A stretch of DNA of 33,435 nucleotides from Octopus bimaculoides (taxonomy: Eukaryota): positions 25,692,750-25,726,184 of the forward strand of contig NC_069003.1 in NCBI RefSeq assembly GCF_001194135.2, read 5' to 3'. Positions 11,730-30,682 of this stretch are shown here, one piece after another; positions within the stretch are counted from its first letter, which is position 1, and every line of letters begins with the position of its first letter. The notes beneath the pieces are model-generated. The model saw only the letters and a program-made list of their open reading frames with translations. It ran no database searches and was not told the origin of the DNA. The position numbers were made by a program, and so were the translations under genes.

Positions 11730-11845
11730 TTTTTTAAAAAAGGATTGACGTAACTCTTCACGAAGGTAAATAGTCAAAACGAAAATAATAATAGTAATAA
11801 TAATAATAATAATAATAATCCTTTCATATTTTTGAAAGGATTGAA

Positions 11846-12140
11846 AAGTTGGGTTTTGAGTTGCTGGGACAACCTGCATACAGTCCAGATCTTGCCCCTT
11901 CCAAGTATCACCTCTTTAGACCACTCTAACATCCTTTACGAGCTCGTCATTTTGCTACGGACGAAGAAGCGAAGCACAAGAAGTGGGGCGTAAATGGTTG
12001 TGCGCAAGCTTGTAGACCACTTCAAGAAGTGCATGGAAAGGCATGGAGACTATGACGAAAAATAATGTAATTGTTCAATTCCTGCTTTTGTTTTGATAAA
12101 TTAGAGATAAGTGTGCGTATAATTTTTTGAGTTACTTTCA
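11846..12140 (+). mobile_element. Mariner transposase C-terminal remnant with 3' terminus
   Basis: Translates LGFELLGQPAYSPDLAPSKYHLFRPL*...KLVDHFKKCMERHGDYDEK*, carrying the mariner YSPDLAP(S/T)D motif, with a stop and a frameshift. Ends in a TIR-like tttttgagttactttca followed by TA. Confidence 0.85.
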
Positions 12141-12175: not shown

Positions 12176-12348
12176 GAAAAATTGCTGGAAGAGCAGGCCA
12201 AACGACAACAGGAACGTCTCGCTAAACTGGAGAAAGAGTTACAGACTCAGTTTGCTATTGAGAAACAAGATCTTTTATTGAAACACGAATCTGAGAAAAA
12301 TCTTCTTGAGCAGAAACTGGCTGAGGACAAGATCCGTTTGACAGAAAT
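12176..12348 (+). CDS. NINL: Ninein-family exon 9 (EKLLEEQAKRQQERLAKLEKELQTQFAIEKQDLLLKHESEKNLLEQKLAEDKIRLTE)
   Basis: attatcag| acceptor, at|gtaagc donor, phase 0 to 2. Confidence 0.9.
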
Positions 12349-12414
12349 GTAAGCACTGTTTCACTTTTACACAACATGATTGAGTGAACACACATACGCA
12401 TATCTTTCAATATA

Positions 12415-12635
12415 TACGAGGCGGTGCCGTAAAGTACCCTGTTTTGGGTAAAAGAAAATACTGGGAGATGAGATAATTATGATTTTATTCAACATATTCT
12501 CTTCCCAAATTCACACACTTATTGCAGAAGCCCTACAGTTTTTTCTAAGCCCTGTAAAAGAACTCGGAAGGTTGGGCCTCCAACCAGGCCTTTCGCGACA
12601 CTCTTAAAACCAGGAACTTTTCAGCACTCCCTTGC

Positions 12636-12636
<1 letters not shown>
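12415..12636. mobile_element. Non-autonomous mariner-like MITE
   Basis: Left end tacgaggcggtgccgtaaagtaccctgtttt is an imperfect inverted repeat of right end aaaaccaggaacttttcagcactcccttg. Sits in TA context with no ORF. Confidence 0.6.
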
Positions 12637-12684
<48 letters not shown>

Positions 12685-12899
12685 TGCGCTTGCATATATA
12701 TACACACACATACAAGCACACATATACACATATATACACACATCTACTCATATAGACATACACACATACACACATCCAAGAACATGCACACACACACATA
12801 CTCATATCTACATAAGTGTACACACTCAAACATTGTTTAGACTCAGATTGACTCTAATAGAGCAGACCTTTCAGCTATGGCCACTATTCTACATCAATA

Positions 12900-13135
12900 T
12901 ATCCTTCTATCGGCGCCAGGCAACTATATTCAGGTTACTCCTTGTCCGTATTGTCTGTCGTTAGGTTTCACCCTAGGTTAATCATGATAGCGCAGACTAT
13001 CTTAAAGGCCCTCCAAATAGGACCAGCCGGTTTTTTTTTAGAGATATCTACAGCTACATTGTCTCAATGTATCTTTCTTTTCTTTAAGACCATAGGTTGT
13101 GATTCGAGGGCTATTCGGCTGATATTTCTAGCAAT
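12900..13135 (-). mobile_element. Possible decayed LINE ORF2 fragment (Tx1/L1-like)
   Basis: Minus frame KIARNISRIALESQPMVLKKRKIH*DNVAVDISKKKPAGPIWRAFKIVCAIMINLG*NLTT is mostly open with scattered stops and has the same orientation as the gag-like fragment at 14245. Family assignment weak. Confidence 0.35.
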
Positions 13136-13188
13136 TTTGAAAGACCATGTTGAGGTCTATAATTTGAAAGACCATGTTGAGGTCTATA
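13136..13188. repeat. 27-bp tandem duplication (tttgaaagaccatgttgaggtctata x2)
   Basis: Two adjacent identical copies, read directly. Confidence 0.9.
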
Positions 13189-13308
13189 TAGAACTGCAAT
13201 AAACATAGAATTGTCTGATATGTTATCTATAAAATATAGAAGTATAATACTACTAGTTACTCATCATACGATGGGTAAATTTGGAAGTATACGTTTGCCA
13301 GCCATCTG

Positions 13309-13381
<73 letters not shown>

Positions 13382-13597
13382 GAGTAAGGAATGTATTTAG
13401 GGAGGAATTCACTTTGAGATTTCGTTTTATGGTAGGGAGATTTCAGAGGGTAAAGTGTTTAGTTACGGTTCAGGAGTTTACAATAGAGCGGCACTGTACC
13501 AGAAAATATGACAAAAACTTTTGAAGATATAAATATAAAAGATACCACGAAACTAAAATGGCTGCCATTTAATAAAACAAGTATGTCTCCTCTCTAG

Positions 13598-13694
13598 GCA
13601 CCAGCTCTGGAACCAATACCCCAATTGGCTACCGTGGCTGCTTTTGCTAAGTAGCTTATTTGTCTATGTTGTCTTTACGGATCCTCCTAGATGA
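13598..13694 (+). CDS. Candidate alternative terminal exon of the ninein-family gene encoding a hydrophobic tail (HQLWNQYPNWLPWLLLLSSLFVYVVFTDPPR*)
   Basis: Acceptor gtctcctctctag|g, in frame with the phase-2 donor at 12348, 31 open codons then TGA. AATAAA occurs at 13736, 13762 and 13801. Prediction only. Confidence 0.35.
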
Positions 13695-14071
13695 ACAGTA
13701 AGTACAAATTACGCAATAGCAACAGTAAAAAAAACAATAAAAAATACACTTCTCTTAAAAAAATAAACACTGAAAAATACACCTCTCTTATTAAAAAAAC
13801 AATAAAAAGAAATGAATGAAACTGTGTAATAATAATCGCTTGCTTTTCACCACATACTGTAGTGCGCTCATAATTACTGCTTTATATCTTATAAGGGGTA
13901 GGTGAGAGGGTTTGGTGAGAATAAACTCTGGTTGTATATAATTCTCATTCCTTTCCCGACTTCACGTGTGTCAGCGATTCAAAATAAGTGGGTTGGTTTT
14001 AGACCGAAATATTTCGTAGCGCTGGTCCTTTAGCCCTTTGACTCCAGACCCTCACAACAAATGTAAACTGC

Positions 14072-14149
<78 letters not shown>

Positions 14150-14244
14150 CCTCTTTATGTACGAAGCACTCTTATCTGTATTCATACCTTGCACTCTATG
14201 GTTGCTTAGAATCGTTAGCACGTTTTCTGTTCCTCTGGCAAGAG

Positions 14245-14690
14245 CTATATTGTTGGTGCTTTTGTAGGCGCTGTGGTGGTGGTCGTAGTCAGCGCCTCTG
14301 TTGTTGTTGACATTGTTTGTCTCTCGTGTAGTTGTTGTTGGTGGTGGTGTTTTTGCTGGAGTCCTATTTGCTTTCTTTTCTTGGGGCTGCTTGTGTTGTT
14401 TGTTGGGGGTTGTTTCAGTTGTTGTGGTGTGGGTGGTGCTTGTATCAAGAGGATAGTGCCCTCCTCCTGTTTTAGTTGTGGGAAGAAGGCTTTCAGGTGC
14501 TTATTCTGTCCGCATTGATGATATCTTGGCCTTCTTCTCTCAACAGTGACGGTCAGCATAGTGCCATCTGGAAGGCTGAGTTGGTCAGGAATTTGTTCCA
14601 AAACGTCTTGGTTTATTTGGACCATTATTTACAATTCCTGACCATTCCAGTTATTTTTCTGATTTTCTCCTCCAAGTTGAGAAGGACGGC
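14245..14690 (-). mobile_element. Retroelement ORF1/gag-like remnant with degenerate CCHC zinc knuckle
   Basis: LPDGTMLTVTVERRRPRYHQCGQNKHLKAFFPQ fits CX2CX4HX4C with the first and last Cys replaced by Y and F, followed by a T/Q/P-rich tail. This layout is typical of Tx1/L1-type ORF1. Confidence 0.7.
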
Positions 14691-14983
14691 CGTGAAGTAT
14701 GCATTTAGATAAAAGACATAAATCTTATTATTTATAAGCTTTGCTTGTAGATAATGCAGACTAGGTAAAAATATCTCATTGTTCTTTTATATAAACAGAA
14801 AAATAATTACAATGTTATATTTTCTCATATGCTATGGCTTTCAGATAATTAACATTTATGTACGTTATGTATATTTGCTATCAATACATAAGTAAGGATG
14901 GTTAATGATAACAGTAATGCGTATGCATGCATGCATGCATGTATGTATGTATGTATGTATGTATGTATGTATGTATGTATGTA

Positions 14984-15027
<44 letters not shown>

Positions 15028-16049
15028 CACACACATGCATAGATATTTTATTAATATTTTATTAATGAATGTCATCAAATATAAATAATACGTGTATACG
15101 TATATACATACATATATACATAAGTACATACATACATATATGAAAAAACTACATCTCTTATAATGATATTNNNNNNNNNNNNNNNNNNNNNNNNNNNNNN
15201 NNNNNNNNNNNNNNNNNNNNNNNNNNNNNNNNNNNNNNNNNNNNNNNNNNNNNNNNNNNNNNNNNNNNNNNNNNNNNNNNNNNNNNNNNNNNNNNNNNNN
15301 NNNNNNNNNNNNNNNNNNNNNNNNNNNNNNNNNNNNNNNNNNNNNNNNNNNNNNNNNNNNNNNNNNNNNNNNNNNNNNNNNNNNNNNNNNNNNNNNNNNN
15401 NNNNNNNNNNNNNNNNNNNNNNNNNNNNNNNNNNNNNNNNNNNNNNNNNNNNNNNNNNNNNNNNNNNNNNNNNNNNNNNNNNNNNNNNNNNNNNNNNNNN
15501 NNNNNNNNNNNNNNNNNNNNNNNNNNNNNNNNNNNNNNNNNNNNNNNNNNNNNNNNNNNNNNNNNNNNNNNNNNNNNNNNNNNNNNNNNNNNNNNNNNNN
15601 NNNNNNNNNNNNNNNNNNNNNNNNNNNNNNNNNNNNNNNNNNNNNNNNNNNNNNNNNNNNNNNNNNNNNNNNNNNNNNNNNNNNNNNNNNNNNNNNNNNN
15701 NNNNNNNNNNNNNNNNNNNNNNNNNNNNNNNNNNNNNNTGTGTGTGCGTGTGTGTGTGTATACTTATACATACATACATACATATTTTTATAATGTGGTT
15801 TCTGTATATGTCGCCTTAGTTTTCTGCACTAATACAGTGTGTTATATAGTACCACGGAATGGGGTAGACATCAATTGTCTCCATTTGATCTATTCCCAAA
15901 TACTTTGCCAACAATTATAACCAATCCAAAACAACTCTTAACGAAGTTTTCAACAATTTCCCGTGACTCCACGAACTCACGAACGACACCTTTCGACTTC
16001 CTGCGATTTCTCATCTCTTATTCTTTTTTTATTGGCCACACAGGGCCTA

Positions 16050-16157
16050 ACGTCCCCGTACCTCAGCTTCGGGTGGCCAATGTTTCTCTGCCCTTTTCGG
16101 AGAGCTTGTCGCAGGGCAGAGAAACATTAGCTGCTCGGAGCTGAGGTACGGGGACGT
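16050..16157. repeat. 45-bp inverted repeat with 18-nt loop
   Basis: 16050-16094 pairs with 16113-16157 at 40 of 45 Watson-Crick positions. Confidence 0.95.
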
Positions 16158-16482
16158 GTGCAGGAGGGACATGAAGGCACTTGCCATCAACACCAATTCC
16201 TGGGAGGATCTCGCAGCCGACCGAACCAGCTGGAGAGGCACTCTTCACAAACAACTGAGGACCGGCGAAGAGAATCTGAGGGTGGCGGCAGCTGAAAATC
16301 GAGCCCGCAGAAAAGAAACGACAGCCAACAGACCGGATTCAACGTATAGGTGAGACCTCTGCAAACAAGACTGCCACTCTTGCATCGGTCTCTACAGCCA
16401 CAGGAGGCGTTGCAAAAACGGAATAGACAACTCAACGAACGGATGACATCATCCATGGTCAGTCATGACCGACGGAGGCCTA
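16095..16482 (+). mobile_element. RTE-type LINE 3' end (5'-truncated) with foldback at its 5' junction
   Basis: LRYGDVCRRDMKALAINTNSWEDLAADRTSWR...YR*DLCKQDCHSCIGLYSHRRRC (C2H2 finger with one Cys mutated to stop), then 3' UTR catccatggtc...gacggaggcc. Confidence 0.85.
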
Positions 16483-16717
16483 AAAAAGAAGGACCTAACA
16501 AAGAGGGGGCAGCACATGGTGGGAACAGAAAAAAGAAAAAACGGATGGAAAGGATGAATTAGATAAAATGGTAAATGAAATGAAGCCTTTCGGCCCCACC
16601 TCCAAGCGACTTCATTGAACTTGTTAATATAACTTCTTTTAAAAACATTATTTGTAACAGTTTAAAACACTATCTGTAACAGCTAACTTTCATATTTCAT
16701 TTTTAAAGATAGCTTAC

Positions 16718-16805
16718 TCGTTCTGGTACTGTGCTGGTGTCCATTTTCTTGACCCAGTGCTAATGCGTAAATGGACTTATTCTTTTGTATGTTGGGTCTT
16801 CCATA
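16718..16805 (-). other. Candidate second exon of the antisense transcript (88 nt)
   Basis: Acceptor atttttaaag| and donor ga|gtaagc on the minus strand. Contains AAAATGG starting MDTSTVPER and an upstream ATG giving MEDPTYKRISPFTH*. Confidence 0.42.
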
Positions 16806-16973
16806 CTTTAAAAATCTTTTTATAAAAGTGAAAGGATTTTGTCTATTTATTTATTTCGACTGTCCACCTGCGATGGTGACTAAATTGACTAGGAGCACTG
16901 TACACGATGAATATCCAGTACCAAACAATCTTAATCTCCATATTTAAACTGCATTAAAATTCGGCAAGCTTAC

Positions 16974-17090
16974 CTTTACCCCATAACGAAGATGTTCTGG
17001 TGGAGATGAAAACGGAGACTGGCTGGTGTCAGATACATCGTTGCTGGAGACGAGTTGTGCGTGTGGTCAGTGGCGAGTGCCAAAGACCTA
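16974..17090 (-). other. Candidate first exon of an antisense transcript (5' end uncertain)
   Basis: About 52% GC block ending at a perfect minus-strand donor AAG|GTAAGC (16974/16973), downstream of a minus-strand TATA-like motif. No long ORF. Confidence 0.45.
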
Positions 17091-17104
17091 GAACAGTCGA
17101 GAAC

Positions 17105-17340
17105 TGCCGTACTTATAGGAAATAATGGGCTCCCAGAAGCTGGTGATTAATTTCCCGAGTAAGGAAAAATATACTGTTGTGCTAACACGATTGGACAGCT
17201 GGAAGCCGACCAATACAAACAACAGGTTCGTTTAATCACGAGGTCATGTGACCGCTGGAACGAAAAGACCTCGTGGAGCCAAAATAGTGGGTATTTAAGC
17301 CTAGATGAGTCAAAGTGAAAGCATCTCACACAATGACAGT
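17105..17340. promoter_or_regulatory. Promoter-like module inside ninein intron, possibly bidirectional
   Basis: ATTGG 17190-17194 and CCAAT 17210-17214 (NF-Y-type), GTCATGTGAC 17243-17252 (USF/MiT-type E-box), inverted CACGAGGTC/GACCTCGTG 17237-17275, TATTTAAG 17292 (+), TATAAGT 17117-17111 (-), TGAGTCA 17306-17312. Confidence 0.45.
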
Positions 17341-19478
17341 GTAAATCGCTTCTACTACAACCTATTTTGAGTTACTTAAAAGGTGGTGTTCCCTTCCTTC
17401 TCTTCTATTTGTTGATACCGTTGTTTCACTTTAAGGATGCTTATTTACCCATCCATTATGATATTTCGACTGTTGTCCATTGTTTCAAATACGTTTTAGC
17501 ATTGTCGTTCTAGCCTTTTTTTTTAAACAGTCACATATGATTCGTCCCAAAGAATCAACCTTTAAATAAGAGTTTTGCTTCCACTAGCGAAAGCTATACG
17601 TATCTTTCAGAAAGCTCCACACCAATTTAATTTTATGCGGCATTCGTTGTTACTTTATGCGCAGGCTATGTGGGAAGACAGAATAAAGGGGCTTTTTTTA
17701 GCTTATCTCTCCGAAAAAATAGCTCCCTTTCCTGTTGAGAAAAATAAACTCGCAGAGGGGNNNNNNNNNNNNNNNNNNNNNNNNNNNNNNNNNNNNNNNN
17801 NNNNNNNNNNNNNNNNNNNNNNNNNNNNNNNNNNNNNNNNNNNNNNNNNNNNNNNNNNNNNNNNNNNNNNNNNNNNNNNNNNNNNNNNNNNNNNNNNNNN
17901 NNNNNNNNNNNNNNNNNNNNNNNNNNNNNNNNNNNNNNNNNNNNNNNNNNNNNNNNNNNNNNNNNNNNNNNNNNNNNNNNNNNNNNNNNNNNNNNNNNNN
18001 NNNNNNNNNNNNNNNNNNNNNNNNNNNNNNNNNNNNNNNNNNNNNNNNNNNNNNNNNNNNNNNNNNNNNNNNNNNNNNNNNNNNNNNNNNNNNNNNNNNN
18101 NNNNNNNNNNNNNNNNNNNNNNNNNNNNNNNNNNNNNNNNNNNNNNNNNNNNNNNNNNNNNNNNNNNNNNNNNNNNNNNNNNNNNNNNNNNNNNNNNNNN
18201 NNNNNNNNNNNNNNNNNNNNNNNNNNNNNNNNNNNNNNNNNNNNNNNNNNNNNNNNNNNNNNNNNNNNNNNNNNNNNNNNNNNNNNNNNNNNNNNNNNNN
18301 NNNNNNNNNNNNNNNNNNNNNNNNNNNNNNNNNNNNNNNNNNNNNNNNNNNNNNNNNNNNNNNNNNNNNNNNNNNNTATATATATATATATATATATATA
18401 TGAATATATGTATGTATGTACATGTATACAATGTGTGGTGCAAAGTAAACCGTTTTTTTGCAACATGCCGAAGTGGTTACTGTAATAATGTGCTAGTTGT
18501 AAACAGATATTTTTCTTTTTCTCTGTGGACAGAACAAATGGATGAAACTGATCAGTTTCAAACCTTATTTGATTTCCATCAGAGATAAAATACCATTTGA
18601 TCGGCACACAGAAATATATGAAACCAAAAATAATATATATTACTACTAAACAAAGTTGACTTTGTTCGGCTGATTAGTACGAGTGATATAAACAAGATTT
18701 TGTTGCTGTATTCTTCAACGTATCCATTTAATTAGACACCAACACGACACCAATTTTCCGCTACACCAGTGGTGTGAAACGAGATAAACTTATTCGTACA
18801 GTTTAGCTACCCGAGTTGGGATAAATTGAGTCAGTTTCGCTGCCTTTCAAGCTCATCAAGACTAATTTATCCTTCTCCTTCCTGAGATATCGAGACAAAG
18901 TTGTAGATGGTTACTTATTTAAATGTAAACAATTACGTAATCAGACAAAAATTCGTTTACATAATGGCCAGTATATGATGAACTTCTATTGATTGCAACA
19001 ATTGGATTCACACATTTTACTGATTTTCAAGCAATCAGTTTTATATATGCAACAACTCTGTATTTATGTATGGTTATAAACTTAACCTCCCACCCACCAA
19101 AAGAAAAAAAAAACCGTTGAAGAAACATTGATAAAACAAAACACTATTTGATGTAGTCAAAACATTATTATAAACGACGATCTGTAGTTTGTCGTATTTG
19201 ATAGTCGAAGAGAGAGAGAGAGAGGATTAAGAGTTAAAAATGGCGTTATCTAAAGAAATGTTTAGAATTTTCATTTCAAAACCTGGCAAGTAGTTTTTAG
19301 TAATTTGGTAAGGCAAAAACTGGTAACGTTTATTTTAATTTATGATGAATAAGAGATATCAGTTCTCAATGTTGAGTCGCCTCACATATTCACCCAAGTT
19401 CGAAAAAAATTGAAATATTTTTCTTATCAATAAGAATACAAAACAAAGAAACAAAGAGAGAGACAGAGAGAGCGAGCG

Positions 19479-19541
<63 letters not shown>

Positions 19542-19544
19542 CAG

Positions 19545-19576
<32 letters not shown>

Positions 19577-20055
19577 AAAATACTATTTAATAGAGACAAA
19601 ATTGAATAAATCCATAATAGAAAAACCTTTTAGNNNNNNNNNNNNNNNNNNNNNNNNNNNNNNNNNNNNNNNNNNNNNNNNNNNNNNNNNNNNNNNNNNN
19701 NNNNNNNNNNNNNNNNNNNNNNNNNNNNNNNNNNNNNNNNNNNNNNNNNNNNNNNNNNNNNNNNNNNNNNNNNNNNNNNNNNNNNNNNNNNNNNNNNNNN
19801 NNNNNNNNNNNNNNNNNNNNNNNNNNNNNNNNNNNNNNNNNNNNNNNNNNNNNNNNNNNNNNNNNNNNNNNNNNNNNNNNNNNNNNNNNNNNNNNNNNNN
19901 NNNNNNNNNNNNNNNNNNNNNNNNNNNNNNNNNNNNNNNNNNNNNNNNNNNNNNNNNNNNNNNNNNNNNNNNNNNNNNNNNNNNNNNTCCCCTTCTTTTT
20001 TTCTTTCCTTGACATCATATAAGCACATCTACACACACGCATACATACACGCATT

Positions 20056-20099
<44 letters not shown>

Positions 20100-20501
20100 T
20101 GTTTGTGTGTGTGTATCTATGTATATAGAAATCTATTCATGTATACACACAGATACACACAGATACACACACAGATACATACATACATGGCTGTATATAT
20201 TTATTCATAACATAAATTTGCCTTGTCTCTAATAATTTTCATCGGGTGGTTTAGCTTGTACCATTATGTAAATGACTTTGCGTCTGGTTACACAATTGTT
20301 CCTATTTAAATATGTAGCCTCGTGCTGCTTTCTCTCGATATGTTGAGACGGATGTGATAATCAGTTATTTCAGATTAAACAATGAAAGTTTCAATGCAGC
20401 TTTTATTTCTGCTTTCCAATTCAATCTATTTCCTTTTGCATTCTATTTCCCAACATTTTCTTATTCTTTTTCTCTTTTCCCTTTTAAACACCTTCTGTCA
20501 C

Positions 20502-20567
<66 letters not shown>

Positions 20568-20572
20568 GTCTA

Positions 20573-20605
<33 letters not shown>

Positions 20606-20825
20606 TATTTTCCTCACTCTCTATCCTGTTGTCTGTCTATTTCTTCTCCTCTCTGCCCCAGCCTCTGTATCTATTTTCCCATTTCTTCGTCTCTCTCTCT
20701 CTCTCTTCTGCCCCGCACCCCTCTCTATATCAAATGCTCTCCTCCTCCTCTTTCCCCCTACTCTCTCCCTCAAACCTTTCCTCTACCTCCACCCTAGTGT
20801 AATCTTGGTTCTATTATTGTTGTAG

Positions 20826-21804
20826 GTTACGTTCTGAATATATGGAAGATTTACAAAGGAAGATTCGTGAGCTAGAAAGATGTTTCAACAACGAACGAGA
20901 GCAATGGAAGAAACTCGGTTGGCCTGTGCGCCAGGAGTCGCCCGACACTAACCCTGTGGAATTAGCTCGGACTGCAGTCAGCCTACCCCTTGCCCTGGAC
21001 AACGCTCCCAGTCCTGTCTCTGAGGGTTTCAGTGAAACTAGTTCTAACTCATTTACCACCATCTCTGTAGCCCACTCCACTGGTTCCGCAACACTTACTG
21101 ATGTTGCAGTTGCCACTGTTAATACTGTTAGTAGTTGTAGTAGTATTAGTAGTGGTAGTGGTGGTGTCGGCGGTGGTAGTAGTGAAATTACTTTCGCCAC
21201 TTGTTCTGTTTCGTCTAGTGTTGATAATCCTCCTCCATGTCCAAGTTCATTTCCAAAAAATGTTTCCTTCAACAAAGATAAAGACGAAGACGCCAGTATA
21301 CCCACTGCCACTGATTCGACAGGTTCCAGAGCCATGTCCACTTTGCCGGATGATATTCAGGAAGTTACTTTAGAGTGTGTCCCACACCATTACTGCACAA
21401 AGAATACTCGGAACAGTGGAACGAAAGAGAATGAAGACATCATCGACAACGACAGGAACAACGACGAGAACGACGACGAGAACGACGGCGATGACGTGGA
21501 CGACGACGACGACGACGACAGCAATAGTGGGGCCAGTGAAAATCTGGCCATTCAGAGAAGAAACAGCAAGACTATATATGACGATTATAAGGCAAACGAC
21601 TCGAAATCCTGCGAAGACGACGTGGTTGATGGAAGCCCTGATATCCCTTCAAGAGAACCACAACCACAACAACAGCAACAGCAATCTCAACAACAGCGTC
21701 AGGAGCTAAGCGACGGAGACGAGAAGAAAGTGATTATACAGCTTTGTTGCATGGAACAACTACACAATGTAGACAACATTCATCTCCAGCGAATTTTTGA
21801 CAAG
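20826..21804 (+). CDS. NINL: Ninein-family exon 10, 979-nt exon: short coiled coil followed by a long S/T/G-, D/N- and Q-rich disordered segment
   Basis: tattgttgtag| acceptor. AT from exon 9 plus G gives ATG, continuing LRSEYMEDLQRKIRELE. Open for 326 codons to aag|gtaaga; phase 2 to 0. Confidence 0.88.
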
Positions 21805-21864: not shown

Positions 21865-22765
21865 NNNNNNNNNNNNNNNNNNNNNNNNNNNNNNNNNNNN
21901 NNNNNNNNNNNNNNNNNNNNNNNNNNNNNNNNNNNNNNNNNNNNNNNNNNNNNNNNNNNNNNNNNNNNNNNNNNNNNNNNNNNNNNNNNNNNNNNNNNNN
22001 NNNNNNNNNNNNNNNNNNNNNNNNNNNNNNNNNNNNNNNNNNNNNNNNNNNNNNNNNNNNNNNNNNNNNNNNNNNNNNNNNNNNNNNNNNNNNNNNNNNN
22101 NNNNNNNNNNNNNNNNNNNNNNNNNNNNNNNNNNNNNNNNNNNNNNNNNNNNNNNNNNNNNNNNNNNNNNNNNNNNNNNNNNNNNNNNNNNNNNNNNNNN
22201 NNNNNNNNNNNNNNNNNNNNNNNNNNNNNNNNATATATATATATATATAGGCAAATCGGAAATAAAAAACAAACACAGCAAAGTCAAAAGGATGTACACA
22301 GTGTATGTATGATATTAGGTTGACGCTCAGTTTAAGACGGAAAAAAAGAGAGGTTGTGTGACGATTCGAACATGGTTCTTCGTCAGAAAGAGGAAAAAGG
22401 AAAGGTCCGAAGAGAAGGAAAAGAATAGTCTGAGAAAAACACTTGTGTGGTTACACATATACATGTGTGTGTGTGCGCGCGCGCCCGTGTGTGTGTGAGT
22501 GTGTGTGTAAGGATTCAATTGTTATAAAGATGCAGTAGAACCTAAGCACATCAACAGGTAGGACGCCAGAAATGGCTGGGCACGATAACACAGAGTTCTC
22601 AGGGAGGTAAACAATAATGAAGGTTTCGCGTCTTGATAGGATACTGCAGATAGGTAAGTACCAAATCCAATTTAAACTGTGGATCTGACTTTGGGGTTGG
22701 TTCAAGGTGTGGTGTAGATATAAAAAGAGAACACAAATGGCCTTTAAAATCACGGCAGCTGGTTT

Positions 22766-22937
22766 GATGCTTAGCAGTATTTCGTCCATCTTTACGTTCT
22801 GAGTTCAAATTCTGCTAGGATTGATTTTACCTTTCATCCTTTCCAGATCGATAAAATAAGTACCAGTTGAGCACTGGGGAACAATGTAATCGACTTACTC
22901 CTTCCCCGAACTTGCTCACCTTGTGCCAAAATTTGGA
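22766..22937 (+). mobile_element. Headless B-tail SINE
   Basis: B-box, core and tail cttgtgccaaaatttgg match 3727-3923. Confidence 0.85.
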
Positions 22938-24849: not shown

Positions 24850-24915
24850 GGGTTAGAAGAGCATCAGACGAGCCGAAAACCAAATTGACACCATTACAAC
24901 GATGTCGGGAAAAAG
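24850..24915 (+). CDS. NINL: Ninein-family exon 12 (VRRASDEPKTKLTPLQRCREK)
   Basis: tttacacacag| acceptor, aag|gtaatt donor, phase 1 to 1, bridging exons 11 and 13 in frame. Confidence 0.7.
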
Positions 24916-25097: not shown

Positions 25098-25276
25098 GTA
25101 GCGCTCAAATGATTTGAACTTACACTCCGAAATCATTACCGAGGGCTAAGTTCGCGTGGTAAAGAGTGGCTGTTAGAGGAATCCAGGTGAGCAGATTTGG
25201 AGATAATGATGCAAATAAACAAATTAAACTGTCGGTAAAGATTTCGACGTATAAATTCAAATCATTTGAGCGTTAC
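25098..25276. mobile_element. 179-bp MITE with ~45-bp terminal inverted repeats and TAA target duplication
   Basis: gtagcgctcaaatgatttgaa versus ttcaaatcatttgagcgttac (20/21), extending inward to ~45 bp. TAA at 25095-25097 and 25277-25279. Confidence 0.8.
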
Positions 25277-25620
25277 TAAGTGTTTTCTATATAGAGATTC
25301 TCTCGATCTCATTTGTTAACTATATGGAGCTACTTAGGGTTTCATCTGTTGACTCTATACATATATACGTATATGCTTTTTTTGCCAGTTTGCAACATGT
25401 AGTTCTCTTCACTCTGACAGTTCCGTCCGTAATTTTTTGATACAATTCCTTCACATATAACTCATGTTACACTTTCTAACATCCTATTACAAACATGTTT
25501 CTAACGTGTTACTTTTCTGAAACAATGTGTAACTTTAAAAAACGTTTTCTGCTAGAAAATGTTCAATACATACAAAAAACACATACATACATGCGTAAAA
25601 TATGCGCACATGAATGCATG

Positions 25621-25677
25621 CATACATACATACGTACATACATACATACATACATACATACATACATACATACATAC
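25621..25677. repeat. (TACA)n left of the RLE fragments
   Basis: Read directly. Confidence 0.95.
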
Positions 25678-25864
25678 GAGGTTTTGTTAGTAAGTGCTTA
25701 AAGGAGAATCTGGATAAACTGGGATTTTCAGAAAGAGAAATCGACCGGCTAATTCGTACATTACAAGTGCAATCTGTGAGTGGAACAGTAAAGATATGCA
25801 AGACTTTTCTCAAGTTCTCCCTACTCAGTGGAAGATTTATAATAATTAAAAAATAGAAGAGACG
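25678..25864 (+). mobile_element. RLE-type non-LTR retrotransposon 3' fragment 1
   Basis: GFVSKCLKENLDKLGFSEREIDRLIRTLQVQSVSGTVKICKTFLKF is homologous to the C-terminus of the adjacent element. Confidence 0.7.
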
Positions 25865-25872
25865 TACATACA

Positions 25873-26636
25873 GAAACTGTATATTGTAGTGGAAATTAGC
25901 TGCCCAGCGGATGTTAACGTAAAGTTAAAGATCAGCAGAAAGAAAATACCTACGCTAAGCTATTGAGAAATCTACAGTTACTGTACCCAGATTACAAGTT
26001 CAAGCTTGTATCTGTAATTATTGGGGGACTGAGAAATGTAACACACTCCCTAAATACCAATCTTGAGAAATTAGGTTTCTCAAAACCAGAAAGGAGAAGG
26101 CTGATTCGAAGACTGCAGATCCAAGCCACGACTGGAACTGTAAAAATCTGCAAAAATTTTTCAGACGTTTATCATTTAAGTATATAAGCATGTCTCGACA
26201 AGTAACTACATGCATGAAAATACAAACATCAAACGAAACATACAAATCTGCACATGCACTGACTCTAAATACTGCACATAAACACATACATGCAAAAGTA
26301 CTCTGTTGATGTTGAAATTCGAATGAAGGTGGTGAGCTGGCAGAAACGTTACCCCCCCGGGCGAAATGCTTAGCAGTATTTCGTCTGCCGTTACGTTCTG
26401 AGTTCAAATTCCACCAGAGTATACTTTGCCTTTCAGCCTTTCGGGGTCGATATATTAAGTACCAGTTACGCACTGGGGTCGACGTAATCGACTTAATCCC
26501 TTTGTCTGTTCTTGTTTGTCCCCTCTATGTTTAGCCCCTTGCAGGCAATAAAGAAATAAGAAGGAGCCTTGGATCTTGGTTAGAAACTGGCTCCTTCTCT
26601 GTTCAGAAGAAATCTTGAAATAAAACTGAATAGTAA
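25873..26636 (+). mobile_element. RLE-type (R2/R4/NeSL superfamily) non-LTR retrotransposon 3' fragment 2, with SINE inserted in its 3' UTR
   Basis: KLYIVVEISCPADVNV...ENTYAKLLRNLQLLYPDYKFKLVSVIIGGLRNV...LEKLGF...TGTVKICKNF (one frameshift) fits the RLE C-terminus pattern (E..CP, K..KY..L, PI.IGALG). Confidence 0.75.
26326..26560 (+). mobile_element. Full A-tail SINE inserted in RLE 3' UTR
   Basis: Same sequence as 3492-3726, with gaagg repeated at both junctions (26325-26329, 26560-26564). Confidence 0.9.
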
Positions 26637-26763
26637 CATACATACATACACGCATACATACATACATACTTACATACATACACACATACATACATACATA
26701 CATACATACATACATACATACATACATACTTACATACATACATACACACATACATACATACAT
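26637..26763. repeat. (TACA)n right of the RLE fragments
   Basis: Read directly; starts exactly at the apparent 3' end of the element. Confidence 0.95.
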
Positions 26764-26832
26764 TTACGATTAAGTTGGTTCGATAATAAGTATGACCATT
26801 GCTTGTTAAAAGCAAACATGATTCTTAAAAAA

Positions 26833-26938
26833 TCCAGCGATCAAGCAGCAGTTTTTATTACGTCTATCACATAAATGTCTCTTCTCCAGCGATCAAGCAG
26901 CAGTTTTTATTACGTCTATCACATAAATGTCTCTTCTC
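26833..26938. repeat. Perfect 52-bp tandem duplication
   Basis: tccagcgatcaagcagcagtttttattacgtctatcacataaatgtctcttc occurs twice adjacently. Confidence 0.95.
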
Positions 26939-27100
26939 AGTTAAATGATATGCAGAATCAGGATATTTAGCCTTGCGCGCAGATAAGTGTCTTTTCAGAT
27001 CACTGATAGAAAGACAACGTTTACAACGCAATTGGCAGACATATGACCTTTCAGGTTGCGCTGATGATTTAAAAAATTATTAGCTTAATTGGTTCATGTA

Positions 27101-27133
<33 letters not shown>

Positions 27134-27169
27134 ATCTATATATAGTATAATCTAGCGACATAAAGATCT

Positions 27170-27249
<80 letters not shown>

Positions 27250-28181
27250 GAAATCGATAGGGATATGCTTATCGATTTTGAATATTTACTGTCTCTACTA
27301 TGTCCATCACCTTAATCTCTANNNNNNNNNNNNNNNNNNNNNNNNNNNNNNNNNNNNNNNNNNNNNNNNNNNNNNNNNNNNNNNNNNNNNNNNNNNNNNN
27401 NNNNNNNNNNNNNNNNNNNNNNNNNNNNNNNNNNNNNNNNNNNNNNNNNNNNNNNNNNNNNNNNNNNNNNNNNNNNNNNNNNNNNNNNNNNNNNNNNNNN
27501 NNNNNNNNNNNNNNNNNNNNNNNNNNNNNNNNNNNNNNNNNNNNNNNNNNNNNNNNNNNNNNNNNNNNNNNNNNNNNNNNNNNNNNNNNNNNNNNNNNNN
27601 NNNNNNNNNNNNNNNNNNNNNNNNNNNNNNNNNNNNNNNNNNNNNNNNNNNNNNNNNNNNNNNNNNNNNNNNNNNNNNNNNNNNNNNNNNNNNNNNNNNN
27701 NNNNNNNNNNNNNNNNNNNNNNNNNNNNNNNNNNNNNNNNNNNNNNNNNNNNNNNNNNNNNNNNNNNNNNNNNNNNNNNNNNNNNNNNNNNNNNNNNNNN
27801 NNNNNNNNNNNNNNNNNNNNNNNNNNNNNNNNNNNNNNNNNNNNNNNNNNNNNNNNNNNNNNNNNNNNNNNNNNNNNNNNNNNNNNNNNNNNNNNNNNNN
27901 NNNNNNNNNNNNNNNNNNNNNNNNNNNNNNNNNNNNNNNNNNNNNNNNNNNNNNNNNNNNNNNNNNNNNNNNNNNNNNNNNNNNNNNNNNNNNNNNNNNN
28001 NNNNNNNNNNNNNNNNNNNNNNNNNNNNNNNNNNNNNNNNNNNNNNNNNNNNNNNNNNNNNNNNNNNNNNNNNNNNNNNNNNNNNNNNNNNNNNNNNNNN
28101 TCCCCACCAATCCCCTCCCCCACTCCACCTCATAGCTAATGCTATAATCGGGTTTGCATTTTTCTTTTTTTCATTTTCCAG

Positions 28182-28318
28182 TTCTGAAGATGGAGAATGA
28201 TCGCAGGTTGCTGACACAGAAATATGAAGACAAACTGCGTCAACAAGATCGAGAAATACAAAAACTGAGAAATAAATTTGTTGAGATGTCAGACACACCG
28301 AAAGATTATTCTGTTAAA
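28182..28318 (+). CDS. NINL: Ninein-family exon 13 (LKMENDRRLLTQKYEDKLRQQDREIQKLRNKFVEMSDTPKDYSVK)
   Basis: Long pyrimidine tract plus ccag| acceptor. The donor aaa|gttaat gives the phase 0 required by the next exon. Confidence 0.85.
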
Positions 28319-28546
28319 GTTAATAAATCCCTGAAGTATATCTTAAATCTGTTGTAAATTAAAAAGGGATACCGTAGAGTTACATAATACTGTGTTATTT
28401 CAAAACGGTAGTTCTCAACCATTTTTCAACTATGTACCCCTTTGATTACTATTTTACTCGGGTAGACCCTTATAACCATTCGATGTTTAAAATTTTTTAA
28501 ATATTTTTATCATTAAATATAAAATTATATTATCAAATGCTTATTT

Positions 28547-28807
28547 AAGGCGGCTAGCTGGCAGAATCGTTAGCACGCTGGGCGAAATGCTTAGCGGTAT
28601 TTCGTCTGCCGTTACGTTCTGAGTTCAAATTCCGCCGAAGTCGACTTTTCCTTCCATCCTTCCAGGATCGATAAATTAAGTACCAGTTACGCACTGAGGT
28701 CGATGTAATCGACTTAATCCCTTTGCCCGTCCTTGTTTGTTCCCTCTATGTTTAGCCCCTTGTGGACAATAAAGAAACAAGAATCGTTAGCATGCCGGGC
28801 GAAATAC
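28547..28807 (+). mobile_element. A-tail SINE followed by the start of a headless second unit (28781-28807)
   Basis: Matches 3492-3760, including the restart at gaatcgttagca. Confidence 0.9.
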
Positions 28808-28990
28808 TTTAACGTCCGCCTTCCATGCTGGCATGGGTTGGATGGTTTTCACAGGACGCAACCTGCTTTAAAGCTGCGTCGAGATCTAATGTCTGATTTG
28901 GCAGGGTTTTTACAGCAGGATACCCTTCCCAACACATTTTTTACTGAGGATACTGGGTGCTTTTTTGTGTGGTACCAACACGAGTAAGGT
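28808..28990. mobile_element. Unclassified interspersed repeat
   Basis: tttaacgtccgccttccatgctggcatgggttggatgg...ggcagggtttttac...ggatacccttcc is recognised from memory as a common octopus repeat. Single copy in the window, so not verifiable here. Confidence 0.45.
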
Positions 28991-29108
28991 CACCATTCAA
29001 CTTGTAAAACTAAAAGGCTGAAAGGGAGCCTATAACTAAAGGAAAATAATAAAAGAGAGAATGAAAATAATAAGAGAGAGAGATATAGATAGATAGAGAG
29101 ATACAGAT

Positions 29109-29141
<33 letters not shown>

Positions 29142-29283
29142 ATAATTTCAAGCGCGGAACTGAGGAAATGCGAGTTATAGATTCTTTGAACCCATTGGCT
29201 GATAGACTTTCTACCATCTTCATTTTGTGTACTTGTGCTTCTTCGTGATAAGATTTTATGATTCCTTTGTCCAATTTTTACAG

Positions 29284-29482
29284 ACGGCTGTCACCAAACT
29301 TGGGTACCATTTACTGTTCCCGCGTCAGAAATACAATAAATCGACCCAAACTGATCGCAGGGGCCATCTGCATCGAAACATGTCGGATTTACATCTCAAG
29401 TGTTTCTACCAAGAAGAGAAATTATATAACTTGGAGAAAGAACTTTCGCAACGAGAGGAACATTCAACCACTATCATGAAAA
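29284..29482 (+). CDS. NINL: Ninein-family exon 14 (TAVTKLGYHLLFPRQKYNKSTQTDRRGHLHRNMSDLHLKCFYQEEKLYNLEKELSQREEHSTTIMK)
   Basis: tttttacag| acceptor, a|gtaggt donor, phase 0 to 1. Confidence 0.85.
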
Positions 29483-29569
29483 GTAGGTGTTGATCTAAAG
29501 TTGAACCTATTCCTCATTTGCTCTCAGCTCACCCTCCCATCTTTATCATTGTTAATATTGTAGAACAAT

Positions 29570-29626
<57 letters not shown>

Positions 29627-29629
29627 TAA

Positions 29630-29815
29630 TAATCCTTTCACCTATAGGTACAAAACCTGGAATTTTATAGGAGGGACAAGCCGATTAGCTTGACCCAAGT
29701 GCTCAACTTGTACTTATTGCATCAACTCCGAAAAAATGAATGGCAAAGTCGACTTCGGCGGAATTTGAGCCCAGAACGTAAAGACGGACGAAATGCTGCT
29801 AAGCATTTTTCTCAG
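29630..29815 (-). mobile_element. Diverged C-tail SINE
   Basis: gaatggcaaagtcgacttcggcggaatttgagcccagaacgtaaagacggacgaaatgctgctaagca is the reverse complement of the shared core and B-box. Confidence 0.8.
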
Positions 29816-29883
29816 CGTAATAATAATAATAATAATAATAATGATAATAATAATGATAATAACAATAAATACTCTGATGCAGT

Positions 29884-30415
29884 ACGTGGCAGCAGCTCTC
29901 ATGGCTTTTAATCTTAACTGATTTAAAGTGTTAACATGTACATGTTTTGTCTTGGTATAGAAGATGGGTTACAGCAAATATTCTGCCCAATATTACAGAT
30001 TTGCTTGTCAGTTGTTTGACCATAACTAGCTGACCATGCCCCTTGGTGGCTGACAATATGTGTATCTCTGATCACGAGCAGGAGTAGTGAGGAGCATCAT
30101 AGCCATTTGTTGAGAGGAATTCTTTGGGGTTTGAATAATTCACCTCTGGAAACATGGGTGTCCCCGTTCATCATCCATAAACAAACCTTATTGAGACACC
30201 TTTTGAGGAGGATGGGTTACTCGACTTGAAGAAAATTCTAACGGGGTCCCCATCTGCAAGGTCATGCACTGTTTATCTTGATATGAGATCACAATGTCAC
30301 GCACATATGATTGTGATGTATGTGCCTGGTGTATCCTTATCAGATGGATATATTTGATTTCGTATATTTGTATCCCATTGTCACTTTAATGGCATGTGCT
30401 ACTCTCTCATTCAAT
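29884..30415. mobile_element. Unclassified interspersed repeat (probably a retroposon 3' end)
   Basis: Recognised from memory as an abundant octopus repeat (catggcttt..atcttaactgatt...gaagaaaattctaac...tgcaaggtcatgc), bounded by AAT repeats. Not verifiable within the window. Confidence 0.45.
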
Positions 30416-30682
30416 AATAATATTTATTATTGTTGCTGTTGTTATGAAAAGTGGTGGAATGAAGAATCGTTCGAGTGGCAGAACAAAATATTTTGCGGTT
30501 TCTGTTTCGGTCTTCACTGTCTGAGCTTGAATTCCACTGATATTGACTTGTCTTTTATCCTTCAAGATCAATAAAATAAAGCACTGATCAGTATGATCGA
30601 CTACACGCCTCCCTACTTAGACTACAATCTATATTAGAAGTCAATAATAACCAATATTTATATCTATATTATCTTTCGATTG

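What the first reader, a model, noticed from the sequence alone, without database searches (positions are those of the whole stretch)
13598..13806. Hidden in-frame terminal exon that would give ninein a transmembrane tail anchor
Seen: a strong acceptor (gtctcctctctag|g) whose frame matches the phase-2 donor of exon 9. Splicing yields ...KIRLTEM-HQLWNQYPNWLPWLLLLSSLFVYVVFTDPPR*, an ~18-residue Trp-flanked hydrophobic stretch with a 4-residue polar end. Three AATAAA hexamers (13736, 13762, 13801) follow. Established: ninein-family proteins are soluble dynein adaptors and microtubule anchors, and Drosophila Bsg25D acts at perinuclear non-centrosomal MTOCs. I know of no membrane-integral ninein isoform. 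Inference: intronic polyadenylation could make a tail-anchored EF-hand/coiled-coil dynein adaptor for ER, nuclear envelope or Golgi, functionally like KASH5. The PPR end is reminiscent of, but much shorter than, a KASH peptide. A consensus donor (aca|gtaagt, 13698) just after the stop would instead make it a poison exon.
Basis: partly seen in the sequence, partly recalled or inferred. Interest (0 to 1): 0.8.

Follow-up and report, generated by a model that had tools for sequence, protein, structure and literature searches.

The report
Conserved truncating cassette exon in octopus ninein
A 100-base hidden exon in an intron of an octopus ninein gene is real enough to be conserved, with both splice sites and its reading frame, in the distant octopod Argonauta; including it would cut ninein down to its N-terminal third and end it in a short greasy tail, but whether that tail anchors the protein in a membrane or merely marks an unproductive transcript is still open.

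Summary
The host gene is ninein, and exon 9 ends in phase 2.

Within the window the feature is no more than chance gives. About one strong acceptor with a TM-like terminal peptide is expected across the nine introns I scored, and one is seen.

Comparison changes the picture. In Argonauta hians the same intron carries the same block on the same strand. Its acceptor and GTAAGTA donor sit at the aligned positions, and the exon-9 frame is open. The block encodes a related hydrophobic peptide (WLPWL..LL...L....V.TD). The rest of the intron cannot be aligned.

What is conserved is a cassette exon, not a terminal exon. The three AATAAA lie in one Octopus-specific 33-nt tandem repeat, and Argonauta has no signal within 1 kb. 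Inclusion stops translation just after the peptide in both species. Octopus uses an in-exon TGA. Argonauta uses a frameshift to TGA in the second codon of the next exon.

Constraint on the peptide is only suggestive (joint p 0.003-0.1). TM strength is moderate in Octopus and sub-threshold in Argonauta. The KASH-like end is not conserved. No expression data could be reached.

Verdict: a genuine conserved truncating exon. The tail-anchor reading is possible but unproven.

The parts
12176..12348 (+). Ninein exon 9 of the window (constitutive). The donor AAT|gtaagc leaves two bases (AT) of a codon, so it is phase 2.
   Evidence: It is 98% identical to residues 507-565 of O. vulgaris ninein CAI9739716.1. 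The orthologous exon and phase are present in L001 and L003.
12349..20825 (+). Host intron (8.5 kb, with three N gaps). Apart from microsatellites, the cassette is the only block with a counterpart in the Argonauta intron.
13578..13597 (+). 3' splice site region of the cassette: a short polypyrimidine tract ...tatgtctcctctctag. A possible branch point TTAAT lies about 25 nt upstream.
   Evidence: PWM 2.5, within the range of real acceptors. An aligned acceptor in Argonauta, tcctcctcctgtag, scores 7.9, among the top 2 of 428 AG sites in its intron. The branch point is by eye only.
13598..13697 (+). Conserved 100-nt cassette exon. In the exon-9 phase it reads (M)HQLWNQYPNWLPWLLLLSSLFVYVVFTDPPR*. 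Its length is not a multiple of 3.
   Evidence: The Argonauta orthologue is L003 30741-30832 (92 nt), reading (M)LMVTTFYSQWLPWLCLLNGLLIHVLTDSNG. Smith-Waterman z = 7.8. Reciprocal tblastn E = 1.8e-5. It is single copy in all sequence on hand.
13692..13694 (+). In-frame TGA, two codons before the cassette donor. It would be a premature stop if the exon is spliced on to exon 10.
   Evidence: Argonauta lacks it, but reaches TGA in the second codon of the next exon through a frameshift (A|GT TGA).
13698..13704 (+). Consensus 5' splice site gtaagta of the cassette.
   Evidence: It is identical (gtaagta) at the aligned position in Argonauta. The Argonauta donor is among the top 7 of 404 GT sites in its intron.
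13727..13808 (+). A-rich 33-nt tandem repeat (about 2.5 copies) that holds all three AATAAA hexamers. It is Octopus-specific.
   Evidence: There is no counterpart, and no AATAAA or ATTAAA, within 1 kb downstream in Argonauta.
20826..21804 (+). The real next constitutive exon (979 nt; LRSEYMEDLQRKIRELERCF... followed by a Ser-rich and acidic low-complexity region).
   Evidence: The junction ...TEM|LRSEYMEDL is present in O. vulgaris ninein and in the A. hians model.

Best explanation
The 100-nt unit at 13598-13697 is a genuine alternative cassette exon of ninein, conserved in evolution. It is not a terminal exon made by intronic polyadenylation.

When it is included between exon 9 and the 979-nt exon 10, the reading frame of exon 9 runs through about 31 mostly hydrophobic codons and then stops. 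In Octopus the stop is a TGA inside the cassette. In Argonauta it arises because the 92-nt cassette shifts the frame onto a TGA in the second codon of exon 10.

Inclusion therefore switches the gene from full-length ninein (1761 aa in O. vulgaris) to a message for roughly residues 1-565 plus a greasy C-terminal peptide. Residues 1-565 carry the EF-hand pair, the Ninein_mid region and the first coiled coils. The message carries a premature stop far upstream of many exon junctions.

I take its main role to be a regulated truncating or unproductive splicing switch for ninein. Part of the included mRNA is likely removed by nonsense-mediated decay. Whatever is translated is a short N-terminal ninein that lacks the C-terminal two-thirds and ends in a hydrophobic tail.

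Shown: the sequence features, their conservation, and the consequences for the frame. Inferred: that the exon is used at all, its regulation, decay of the mRNA, and the fate of the protein.
For: Orthology and constraint on the exon:
- tblastn with the tail hits L003 30760-30825, in the same intron and on the same strand (E = 0.002).
- The reciprocal hit lands on window 13617-13673 (E = 1.8e-5).
- The nucleotide Smith-Waterman score is 22, against 11.5 +/- 1.3 for shuffles.
- It is the only block of the 8.5-kb intron with a counterpart, apart from microsatellites.
- The flanks do not align.
- In Argonauta the cassette plus about 10-30 nt on each side is the only single-copy DNA between repeats.

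Both splice sites fall at the aligned positions. They are strong in Argonauta, with the acceptor in the top 2 of 428 and the donor in the top 7 of 404.

The donor is conserved and the poly(A) signals are not.

The frame is broken in both species, with a stop at nearly the same place.

Gene identity and exon map:
- O. vulgaris 'ninein isoform X1' maps on the window as 16 exons.
- Precomputed Pfam hits to EF-hand_7 and Ninein_mid are on record for the orthologues.
Against: - No transcript evidence of any kind could be reached.
- Annotated proteins of O. vulgaris and A. hians skip the cassette.
- No protein carrying the tail exists in the searched sets.
- Only two species could be compared. The O. 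sinensis contigs and the ENA contig L001 do not cover the place.
- Nucleotide identity is only 59% and the flanking intron is not conserved. This is unlike classical ultraconserved poison exons.
- The Octopus acceptor alone is unremarkable.
- The open frame and retained hydrophobicity are not needed for a pure decay switch. They hint that the peptide itself matters.
Confidence: 0.55

Rival explanations
1. The protein product is the point (the first reader's idea, freed from the poly(A) detail). Including the exon makes a short ninein, consisting of the EF-hand dynein-binding head and the first coiled coils. Its C-terminal hydrophobic stretch inserts post-translationally into a membrane such as the ER, outer nuclear envelope, Golgi or mitochondrial outer membrane. 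The result is a membrane-tethered dynein adaptor or microtubule anchor.
For: - The exon-9 frame is open through the whole cassette in both species, while both other frames carry stops.
- The internal indel is exactly one codon.
- Differences in the core fall 10:3:10 on codon positions 1, 2 and 3, with five synonymous Leu/Pro codons.
- F/L and V/I replacements keep the hydrophobic character.
- Neutral-drift simulations give a joint probability of 0.003 (free placement) or 0.009 (changes kept per codon) for an open frame, at least 12 identical residues and the observed hydrophobicity together.
- The stop falls 5-6 residues after the conserved TD in both species, by different means.
- The Octopus stretch scores like moderately hydrophobic tail anchors.
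- KASH5 shows that an EF-hand/coiled-coil dynein activator can be membrane-integral (PMC10071310, PMC9242646).
Against: - Argonauta's stretch WLPWLCLLNGLLIHVL has KD18 1.29 and a Hessa sum of +2.5 to +4, below the usual TM thresholds.
- dN/dS is about 0.57, not clearly below 1. The most conservative simulation gives p = 0.098.
- T-rich intronic sequence yields TM-like peptides at 3-4.5% of AG sites anyway.
- The message would carry a premature stop unless it is polyadenylated in the intron, and that feature is not conserved.
- From general knowledge, a consensus 5' splice site 38 nt upstream of the AATAAA would be expected to suppress those sites through U1 snRNP.
- No such protein is annotated or present in the databases searched.
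- No paper links ninein to a tail anchor.
Confidence: 0.25
2. A terminal exon made by intronic cleavage and polyadenylation at the AATAAA cluster at 13736-13806.
For: In Octopus, three AATAAA lie 42-109 nt downstream of the TGA. This is the only cluster of three within 100 nt in the window.
Against: - All three sit in one 33-nt tandem repeat, so they are a single event.
- Background density is 1.1 AATAAA per kb.
- Argonauta has no AATAAA or ATTAAA within 1 kb.
- A perfect GTAAGTA donor is conserved between the stop and the signals.
Confidence: 0.1
3. A non-functional pseudo-exon. It would be a chance juxtaposition of splice-like sites, or a relic of an old transposon, and the similarity to Argonauta would carry no functional meaning.
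For: - Within the window the feature is exactly at chance expectation.
- The intron is full of repeats.
- In Argonauta the polypyrimidine tract abuts a repeated element.
- Identity is only 59%.
Against: - Same intron, same strand, same phase, and both splice sites aligned, in a pair of genomes whose introns are otherwise unalignable.
- No second copy in the window, L001, L002, L003 or L004, about 120 kb in all.
Confidence: 0.1

Closest known systems
Premature-stop ('poison') cassette exons that couple alternative splicing to nonsense-mediated decay
   Same: - It is an internal exon with its own 3' and 5' splice sites.
- Its length is not a multiple of three in either species (100 and 92 nt).
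- Inclusion creates a stop far upstream of many exon junctions.
- The exon is conserved across genera while the surrounding intron is not.
   Different: - Classical examples are conserved almost base for base, together with their intronic flanks. Here identity is 59% and the flanks are unalignable.
- The upstream frame stays open to the very end of the exon in both species and keeps a hydrophobic peptide. A pure decay switch does not need either.
- Sensitivity to decay was not testable.
Vertebrate ninein isoforms with alternative C-termini
   Same: Alternative splicing of ninein changes its C-terminal part and hence its localisation and function. Mouse macrophage ninein-CAN and ninein-ISO2 are an example (PMC12135376). 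A recent review asks whether non-centrosomal anchoring of ninein uses such isoforms (PMC12651242).
   Different: Those isoforms differ near the far C-terminus and remain long soluble coiled-coil proteins. This exon would cut the protein at about residue 565 of 1761 and add a hydrophobic end. No homology between the exons was looked for or found.
C. elegans NOCA-1h, a ninein-related protein with an isoform-specific membrane-targeting region
   Same: A ninein-family protein in which an isoform-specific short region directs cell-surface or membrane localisation independently of gamma-tubulin (PMC4608005).
   Different: In NOCA-1h the region is N-terminal. It comes from an alternative start, works through a predicted palmitoylated cysteine rather than a hydrophobic segment, and is dispensable for function.
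KASH5, the transmembrane EF-hand/coiled-coil activating adaptor of dynein
   Same: An N-terminal EF-hand pair, then a coiled coil, then a C-terminal hydrophobic segment. It would work as a membrane-fixed dynein adaptor (PMC10071310, PMC9242646).
   Different: KASH5 has a bona fide TM helix followed by a luminal KASH peptide that binds SUN proteins. Here only 5-6 residues follow the stretch, the 'PPR' end occurs in Octopus only, and TM strength is marginal in Argonauta. No sequence relationship was found.

Membership tests
Ninein / ninein-like protein family (identity of the host gene) | N-terminal EF-hand pair | tested here: met
   Not inside the window, because the window starts at residue 144 of the orthologue. 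The orthologues P0002 (A. hians) and P0006 (O. vulgaris) hit EF-hand_7.
Ninein / ninein-like protein family (identity of the host gene) | Ninein_mid region (Pfam PF27645) | tested here: met
   Precomputed hits are on record for P0002, P0006 and P0007. The window's exons are 86-98% identical to the matching parts of P0006. The local Pfam copy lacks this model, so the window's own translation gave no hit.
Ninein / ninein-like protein family (identity of the host gene) | Orthology to a protein annotated as ninein | tested here: met
   CAI9739716.1 'ninein isoform X1 [Octopus vulgaris]' maps colinearly on the window as 16 exons.
Tail-anchored membrane proteins | A single TM segment within about 30 residues of the C-terminus | tested here: inconclusive
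   Octopus: KD18 1.89 and a Hessa sum of about +0.8, with a P and two S inside the stretch. Argonauta: KD18 1.29 and Hessa +2.5 to +4, with N, G and H inside. Only simple hydropathy scales were used. No dedicated predictor was available.
Tail-anchored membrane proteins | No N-terminal signal peptide; post-translational insertion | not testable with these tools
   The N-terminus of O. vulgaris ninein (MDENEGITVD...) is acidic and does not look like a signal peptide by eye. Insertion needs experiment.
KASH-domain proteins | TM helix followed by a luminal peptide of about 30 residues ending in PPPX | tested here: not met
   Only 5 residues (TDPPR) follow the stretch in Octopus and 6 (TDSNGS) in Argonauta. 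The prolines are not conserved.
Poison (decay-coupled) cassette exons | Own 3' and 5' splice sites; inclusion gives a premature stop upstream of exon junctions | tested here: met
   Both sites are present and conserved. The stop is TGA at 13692 in Octopus. In Argonauta it is a frameshift TGA at codon 2 of the next exon. At least seven exons follow in the window.
Poison (decay-coupled) cassette exons | Included transcripts rise when nonsense-mediated decay is blocked | not testable with these tools
   No expression data were reachable.
Poison (decay-coupled) cassette exons | High nucleotide conservation that extends into the flanking intron (typical, not obligatory) | tested here: not met
   59% identity inside the exon, and the flanks are unalignable.
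Alternative last exons made by intronic polyadenylation | A poly(A) signal downstream of the stop, conserved, with no competing strong 5' splice site | tested here: not met
   AATAAA x3 occurs in Octopus only, inside one tandem repeat. Argonauta has none within 1 kb. A GTAAGTA donor is conserved.

The most novel reading that the evidence does not exclude
Octopods make, by including a conserved 92-100-nt exon, a short ninein of about 600 residues. It has the EF-hand dynein-binding head plus the first coiled coils. Its about 30-residue hydrophobic C-terminus anchors it in an intracellular membrane. This would be the first membrane-integral ninein. It would also be a second example, independent of KASH5, of a membrane-fixed EF-hand dynein adaptor or non-centrosomal microtubule anchor.
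Probability: 0.25. Interest if true: 0.8.

Novelty: new variant of a known kind. Interest (0 to 1): 0.55.

Why it matters
How ninein reaches non-centrosomal sites such as the cell cortex, nuclear envelope and Golgi is an open question. A recent review asks explicitly whether isoforms with other C-termini do this (PMC12651242).

A conserved exon that cuts ninein after its dynein-binding third and adds a hydrophobic end offers a concrete, testable candidate in cephalopods, whose large neurons depend on long-range microtubule transport.

If the exon is instead a decay-coupled switch, it would be an example of conserved unproductive splicing controlling the dose of a centrosomal scaffold in a mollusc. 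That is still useful for annotation. Current gene models of O. vulgaris and A. hians skip the exon. O. sinensis has the gene in pieces, one of them under an unrelated name.

Tried and rejected
- **Transposon or repeat origin.** Self-BLAST of 12349-14100 found no other copy in the window. There is no copy in L001, L002 or L004. In Argonauta the block is single copy between repeats. The idea is rejected as far as about 120 kb allows. No whole genome was searchable.
- **Known non-coding RNA.** Rfam at E <= 1 gave only sub-threshold microsatellite-driven miRNA matches elsewhere, and nothing at 13400-13900.
- **Conserved RNA structure.** Fold z-scores are -0.74 and +1.08, and the consensus energy is -5.75 kcal/mol. 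Rejected.
- **Recursive splice site.** The cassette begins GCACCA in Octopus and GCTGAT in Argonauta. Joining it to exon 9 does not rebuild a GT donor, so this is rejected by inspection.
- **Alternative acceptor at 13605.** It would give a 93-nt exon, but it runs into TAA after 15 codons (by hand).
- **Protein searches for the tail.** There was no true hit in the word-indexed 5.8-billion set, either with exon 9 plus tail or with a two-species profile. There was none in the exhaustive 1.84-billion set either. Its single hit, P0005, is an SRCR/Ig repeat protein that scores through many weak 'VIVTDPP' repeats. The indexed search shows only cluster representatives, so it hid O. vulgaris ninein behind a 439-aa fragment until the cluster was listed.
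- **Closer relatives.** The O. vulgaris gene spans 128 kb, so no DNA was returned. O. sinensis contigs VCDQ01004533.1 and VCDQ01004595.1 stop short of the cassette on either side. The ENA contig L001 ends 5.7 kb into the intron without it, and in Argonauta the cassette lies 5.6 kb in.
- **Other look-ups.** An exact look-up of the exon-9 ORF found nothing. A degenerate 29-base pattern of the conserved core found nothing in JGI metagenomes. A PDB sequence search showed only calmodulin-like EF-hand similarity.

Full report
**Observation**

- Exon 9 (12176-12348) ends ACA GAA AT|gtaagc.
- At 13598 an acceptor-like site, gtctcctctctag|G, opens a frame that reads M-HQLWNQYPNWLPWLLLLSSLFVYVVFTDPPR with the carried-over AT.
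- That frame stops at TGA (13692-13694).
- A gtaagt donor follows at 13698, so the acceptor-to-donor unit is 100 nt.
- AATAAA occurs at 13736, 13762 and 13801.

**Gene model**

I built the gene model by hand. Ten GT-AG exons gave one open frame of 764 residues. The model was then confirmed and completed by Octopus vulgaris 'ninein isoform X1' (CAI9739716.1, 1761 aa). Its residues 144-1160 map on the window as 16 colinear exons.

The exon ending at 12348 is the ninth of these. The true next exon is 20826-21804, giving the junction ...KIRLTEM|LRSEYMEDL. The candidate therefore lies 1.25 kb into an 8.5-kb intron.

The orthologues carry EF-hand_7 and Ninein_mid, so the host gene is ninein.

The window is from an Octopus species close to, but not the same as, O. 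sinensis and O. vulgaris. Intron identity is about 89% and exon identity 84-98%. The species itself was not determined.

**Chance within the window**

I scored splice sites with a generic weight matrix whose frequencies I took from memory. I calibrated it only against the real sites of this gene.
- The candidate acceptor scores 2.5. Real acceptors range from -3.2 to 4.5.
- 22 of 372 AG sites in the intron score as well or better.
- The donor scores 2.3, and 15 of 386 GT sites do as well.

I translated every intronic AG site in the correct phase. About 3% (23 of 746) give a terminal peptide as TM-like as this one, and the rate is 4.5% on the opposite strand. With 32 equally strong acceptors, about one such case is expected in nine introns, and one is found.

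The three AATAAA sit in about 2.5 copies of one 33-nt A-rich tandem repeat. Background density is 1.1 per kb.

The hydrophobic stretch is moderate. Its KD mean is 1.89 over 18 residues. Its Hessa sum is about +0.8 kcal/mol, and -1.1 for the 15-residue core. Taken alone, the finding is what a T-rich intron produces by chance.

**Related sequences**

The protein searches returned few cephalopod entries, but enough to fetch four loci.
- **L001.** An unidentified cephalopod contig in ENA assembly ERZ21867824. It carries the four exons that end with exon 9 (labels B-E), with 76-89% amino-acid identity and the same phase-2 donor.
- **L002 and L004.** Two O. sinensis contigs that hold other parts of the gene.
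- **L003.** Argonauta hians, with the whole region.

L001 ends 5.7 kb into the intron. The O. sinensis contigs stop short on both sides. All three are uninformative.

In Argonauta, tblastn with the tail ORF hit L003 30760-30825. The hit is inside the orthologous intron (25145-32497), on the same strand, with E = 0.002. Reading the DNA shows tcctcctcctgtag|GCTGATGG...ACGGATTCTAATGGAA|gtaagtat. This is a 92-nt unit (30741-30832). Its acceptor and its gtaagta donor fall exactly where the Octopus sites fall in the alignment.

In the phase left by Argonauta's exon 9 (GAC AT|gtgagt) it reads M-LMVTTFYSQWLPWLCLLNGLLIHVLTDSNG.

Support for orthology:
- The Smith-Waterman score is 22, against 11.5 +/- 1.3 for shuffles, with a maximum of 17 in 300.
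- The Argonauta peptide finds window 13617-13673 as its best hit (E = 1.8e-5).
- A scan of the whole Octopus intron in 120-nt windows found no other block with a counterpart, apart from microsatellites.
- The sequence on either side of the unit does not align.
- In Argonauta the unit plus about 10-30 nt on each side is the only single-copy DNA in a field of satellite-like and SINE-like repeats.
- Its splice sites are among the best in that intron, with the acceptor in the top 2 of 428 and the donor in the top 7 of 404.

This is the signature of an exon held by selection, not of a chance pseudo-exon.

**What kind of exon**

The donor is conserved and the poly(A) signals are not. Argonauta has no AATAAA or ATTAAA within 1 kb downstream. 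From general knowledge, a consensus 5' splice site just upstream of a poly(A) signal tends to suppress it through U1 snRNP. The conserved architecture is therefore a cassette exon.

Neither length is a multiple of three (100 and 92 nt). In Octopus the frame ends at the TGA two codons before the donor. Without that TGA it would end at the fourth codon of exon 10 (GTT ACG TTC TGA). In Argonauta the extra base joins exon 10 as A|GT TGA, which stops at the second codon.

In both species, inclusion ends the protein 5-6 residues after a conserved Thr-Asp. That is about residue 565 of 1761 plus about 31 residues. The stop lies far upstream of at least seven further exon junctions.

**Coding constraint on the peptide**

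The evidence is suggestive only.
- The frame of exon 9 is open over all 30 aligned codons in both species. The other two frames carry 1-5 stops.
- The one internal indel is a whole codon.
- In the core, differences fall 10:3:10 on codon positions 1, 2 and 3, and several Leu/Pro codons differ only synonymously.
- Overall identity is 59% for nucleotides and 12 of 30 for residues, with dN/dS about 0.57.

I simulated neutral drift from the Octopus sequence with the observed number of changes. The table gives the joint probability of an open frame, at least 12 identical residues, and hydrophobicity as high as observed.

| Constraint on the simulated changes | Joint probability |
|---|---|
| Changes fall anywhere | 0.003 |
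| Number of changes per codon kept | 0.009 |
| Changed positions kept, only the new bases redrawn | 0.098 |

Argonauta's stretch WLPWLCLLNGLLIHVL is weaker. Its KD18 is 1.29 and its Hessa sum is +2.5 to +4.

The 'PPR' end is not conserved, and only 5-6 residues follow the stretch, so a KASH-like function is excluded.

**Other explanations examined**
- There is no Rfam match at the cassette.
- There is no stable or covarying RNA fold.
- It is not a recursive splice site, because the cassette starts GC, not GT.
- No protein with this tail was found in 5.8 billion indexed clusters.
- None was found among 1.84 billion exhaustively scanned representatives either. The single hit there is a spurious repeat protein.
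- The literature held here has no tail-anchored or transmembrane ninein.

The literature does hold several related cases:
- A ninein-related isoform, NOCA-1h, is targeted to membranes through a predicted palmitoyl cysteine (PMC4608005).
- Mouse ninein isoforms have different C-termini (PMC12135376).
- KASH5 is a membrane-integral EF-hand dynein activator.
- A review places the dynein/dynactin-binding elements of ninein in its N-terminal part and asks whether splice isoforms direct non-centrosomal anchoring (PMC12651242).

**Verdict**

Its significance could not be seen from the window alone and rests on the Argonauta comparison.

The best-supported reading is a conserved alternative cassette exon that truncates ninein after its N-terminal third and appends a hydrophobic peptide (confidence 0.55). 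Its use, its regulation and the fate of the mRNA and protein are inferred, not shown.

The membrane-anchor reading remains alive at about 0.25. The intronic-polyadenylation mechanism and the KASH analogy are not supported. A meaningless pseudo-exon is now unlikely (about 0.1).

The decisive data are junction reads, more octopod orthologues and a localisation test of the tail. All are ordinary and obtainable.

Noticed in passing
L003 30671-30717 and 30864-30912 (also 30483-30548 against 30930-31189): In Argonauta the cassette is bracketed by inverted copies of a repeat of about 50-66 nt (84-94% identical). In the pre-mRNA these could pair and loop out the cassette, which would favour skipping or back-splicing. 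Octopus has no inverted repeat around its cassette.
   Followed up: partly
L002 (O. sinensis VCDQ01004533.1) and L004 (VCDQ01004595.1): O. sinensis ninein is scattered over unplaced contigs. XP_036355789.1, named 'putative uncharacterized protein DDB_G0277255', is in fact the middle of ninein (exon 10 onward). XP_036356180.1 'ninein-like, partial' is the N-terminal part. The piece with the three constitutive exons ending in exon 9 (window exons 7-9), and hence the cassette, was not found.
   Followed up: partly
L003 10001-32690 and 34347-42690: The Argonauta hians annotation splits ninein into two gene models: 628 aa (partial) and 1217 aa. The first ends inside the low-complexity part of exon 10.
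   Followed up: no
window 7744-7851 and 24852-24914: Two further small ninein exons that my hand-built model had missed. They were revealed by mapping O. vulgaris ninein. The first (36 codons) keeps the frame, which is why the model looked consistent without it.
   Followed up: yes
window 20826-21804: Exon 10 is a 979-nt exon encoding Ser-rich, poly-Asp/Asn and poly-Gln low-complexity sequence. It evolves much faster than the coiled-coil exons: 84% against 92-98% amino-acid identity to O. vulgaris. It differs by several indels.
   Followed up: no
window 584-1257, 3490-3823, 7993-8094, 8735-8896, 22767-22901, 26326-26560, 28547-28810, 29670-29817, 31830-32036: There are many copies, on both strands, of one short interspersed repeat. 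It translates as ...RPRRNLNSERNGRRNTAKHFAR.... It is also abundant in the O. sinensis contig at 75-93% identity. A second repeat family (9772-10094, 30681-31058) is likewise shared. The cassette belongs to neither family.
   Followed up: partly
window 9318-9794 (-), 16051-16350 (+), 11819-11926 (+): ORF fragments that look to me like tails of LINE ORF2 (...NWEQLMEDRSVWKE......NSWEDLAADRTSWRG...) and of a mariner-type transposase (...PAYSPDLAPSKYHLF...). Pfam gave no significant match, so these labels rest on recollection only.
   Followed up: partly
window: 11 runs of N (2681-2809, 6490-6499, 6937-7350, 8098-8636, 10095-10646, 15171-15738, 17761-18376, 19634-19987, 21865-22232, 27322-28100, 32563-32779): 4546 of 33435 bases are assembly gaps. 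Three of the gaps lie in the host intron of the cassette, so further conserved elements there cannot be excluded.
   Followed up: no
protein search tool behaviour: The indexed protein search shows only cluster representatives. Full-length O. vulgaris ninein was hidden in a cluster represented by a 439-aa O. sinensis fragment. Searches with the two exons ending in exon 9 (window exons 8 and 9) therefore missed it, and they also missed the A. hians protein. Negative results from that tool are weak evidence.
   Followed up: yes
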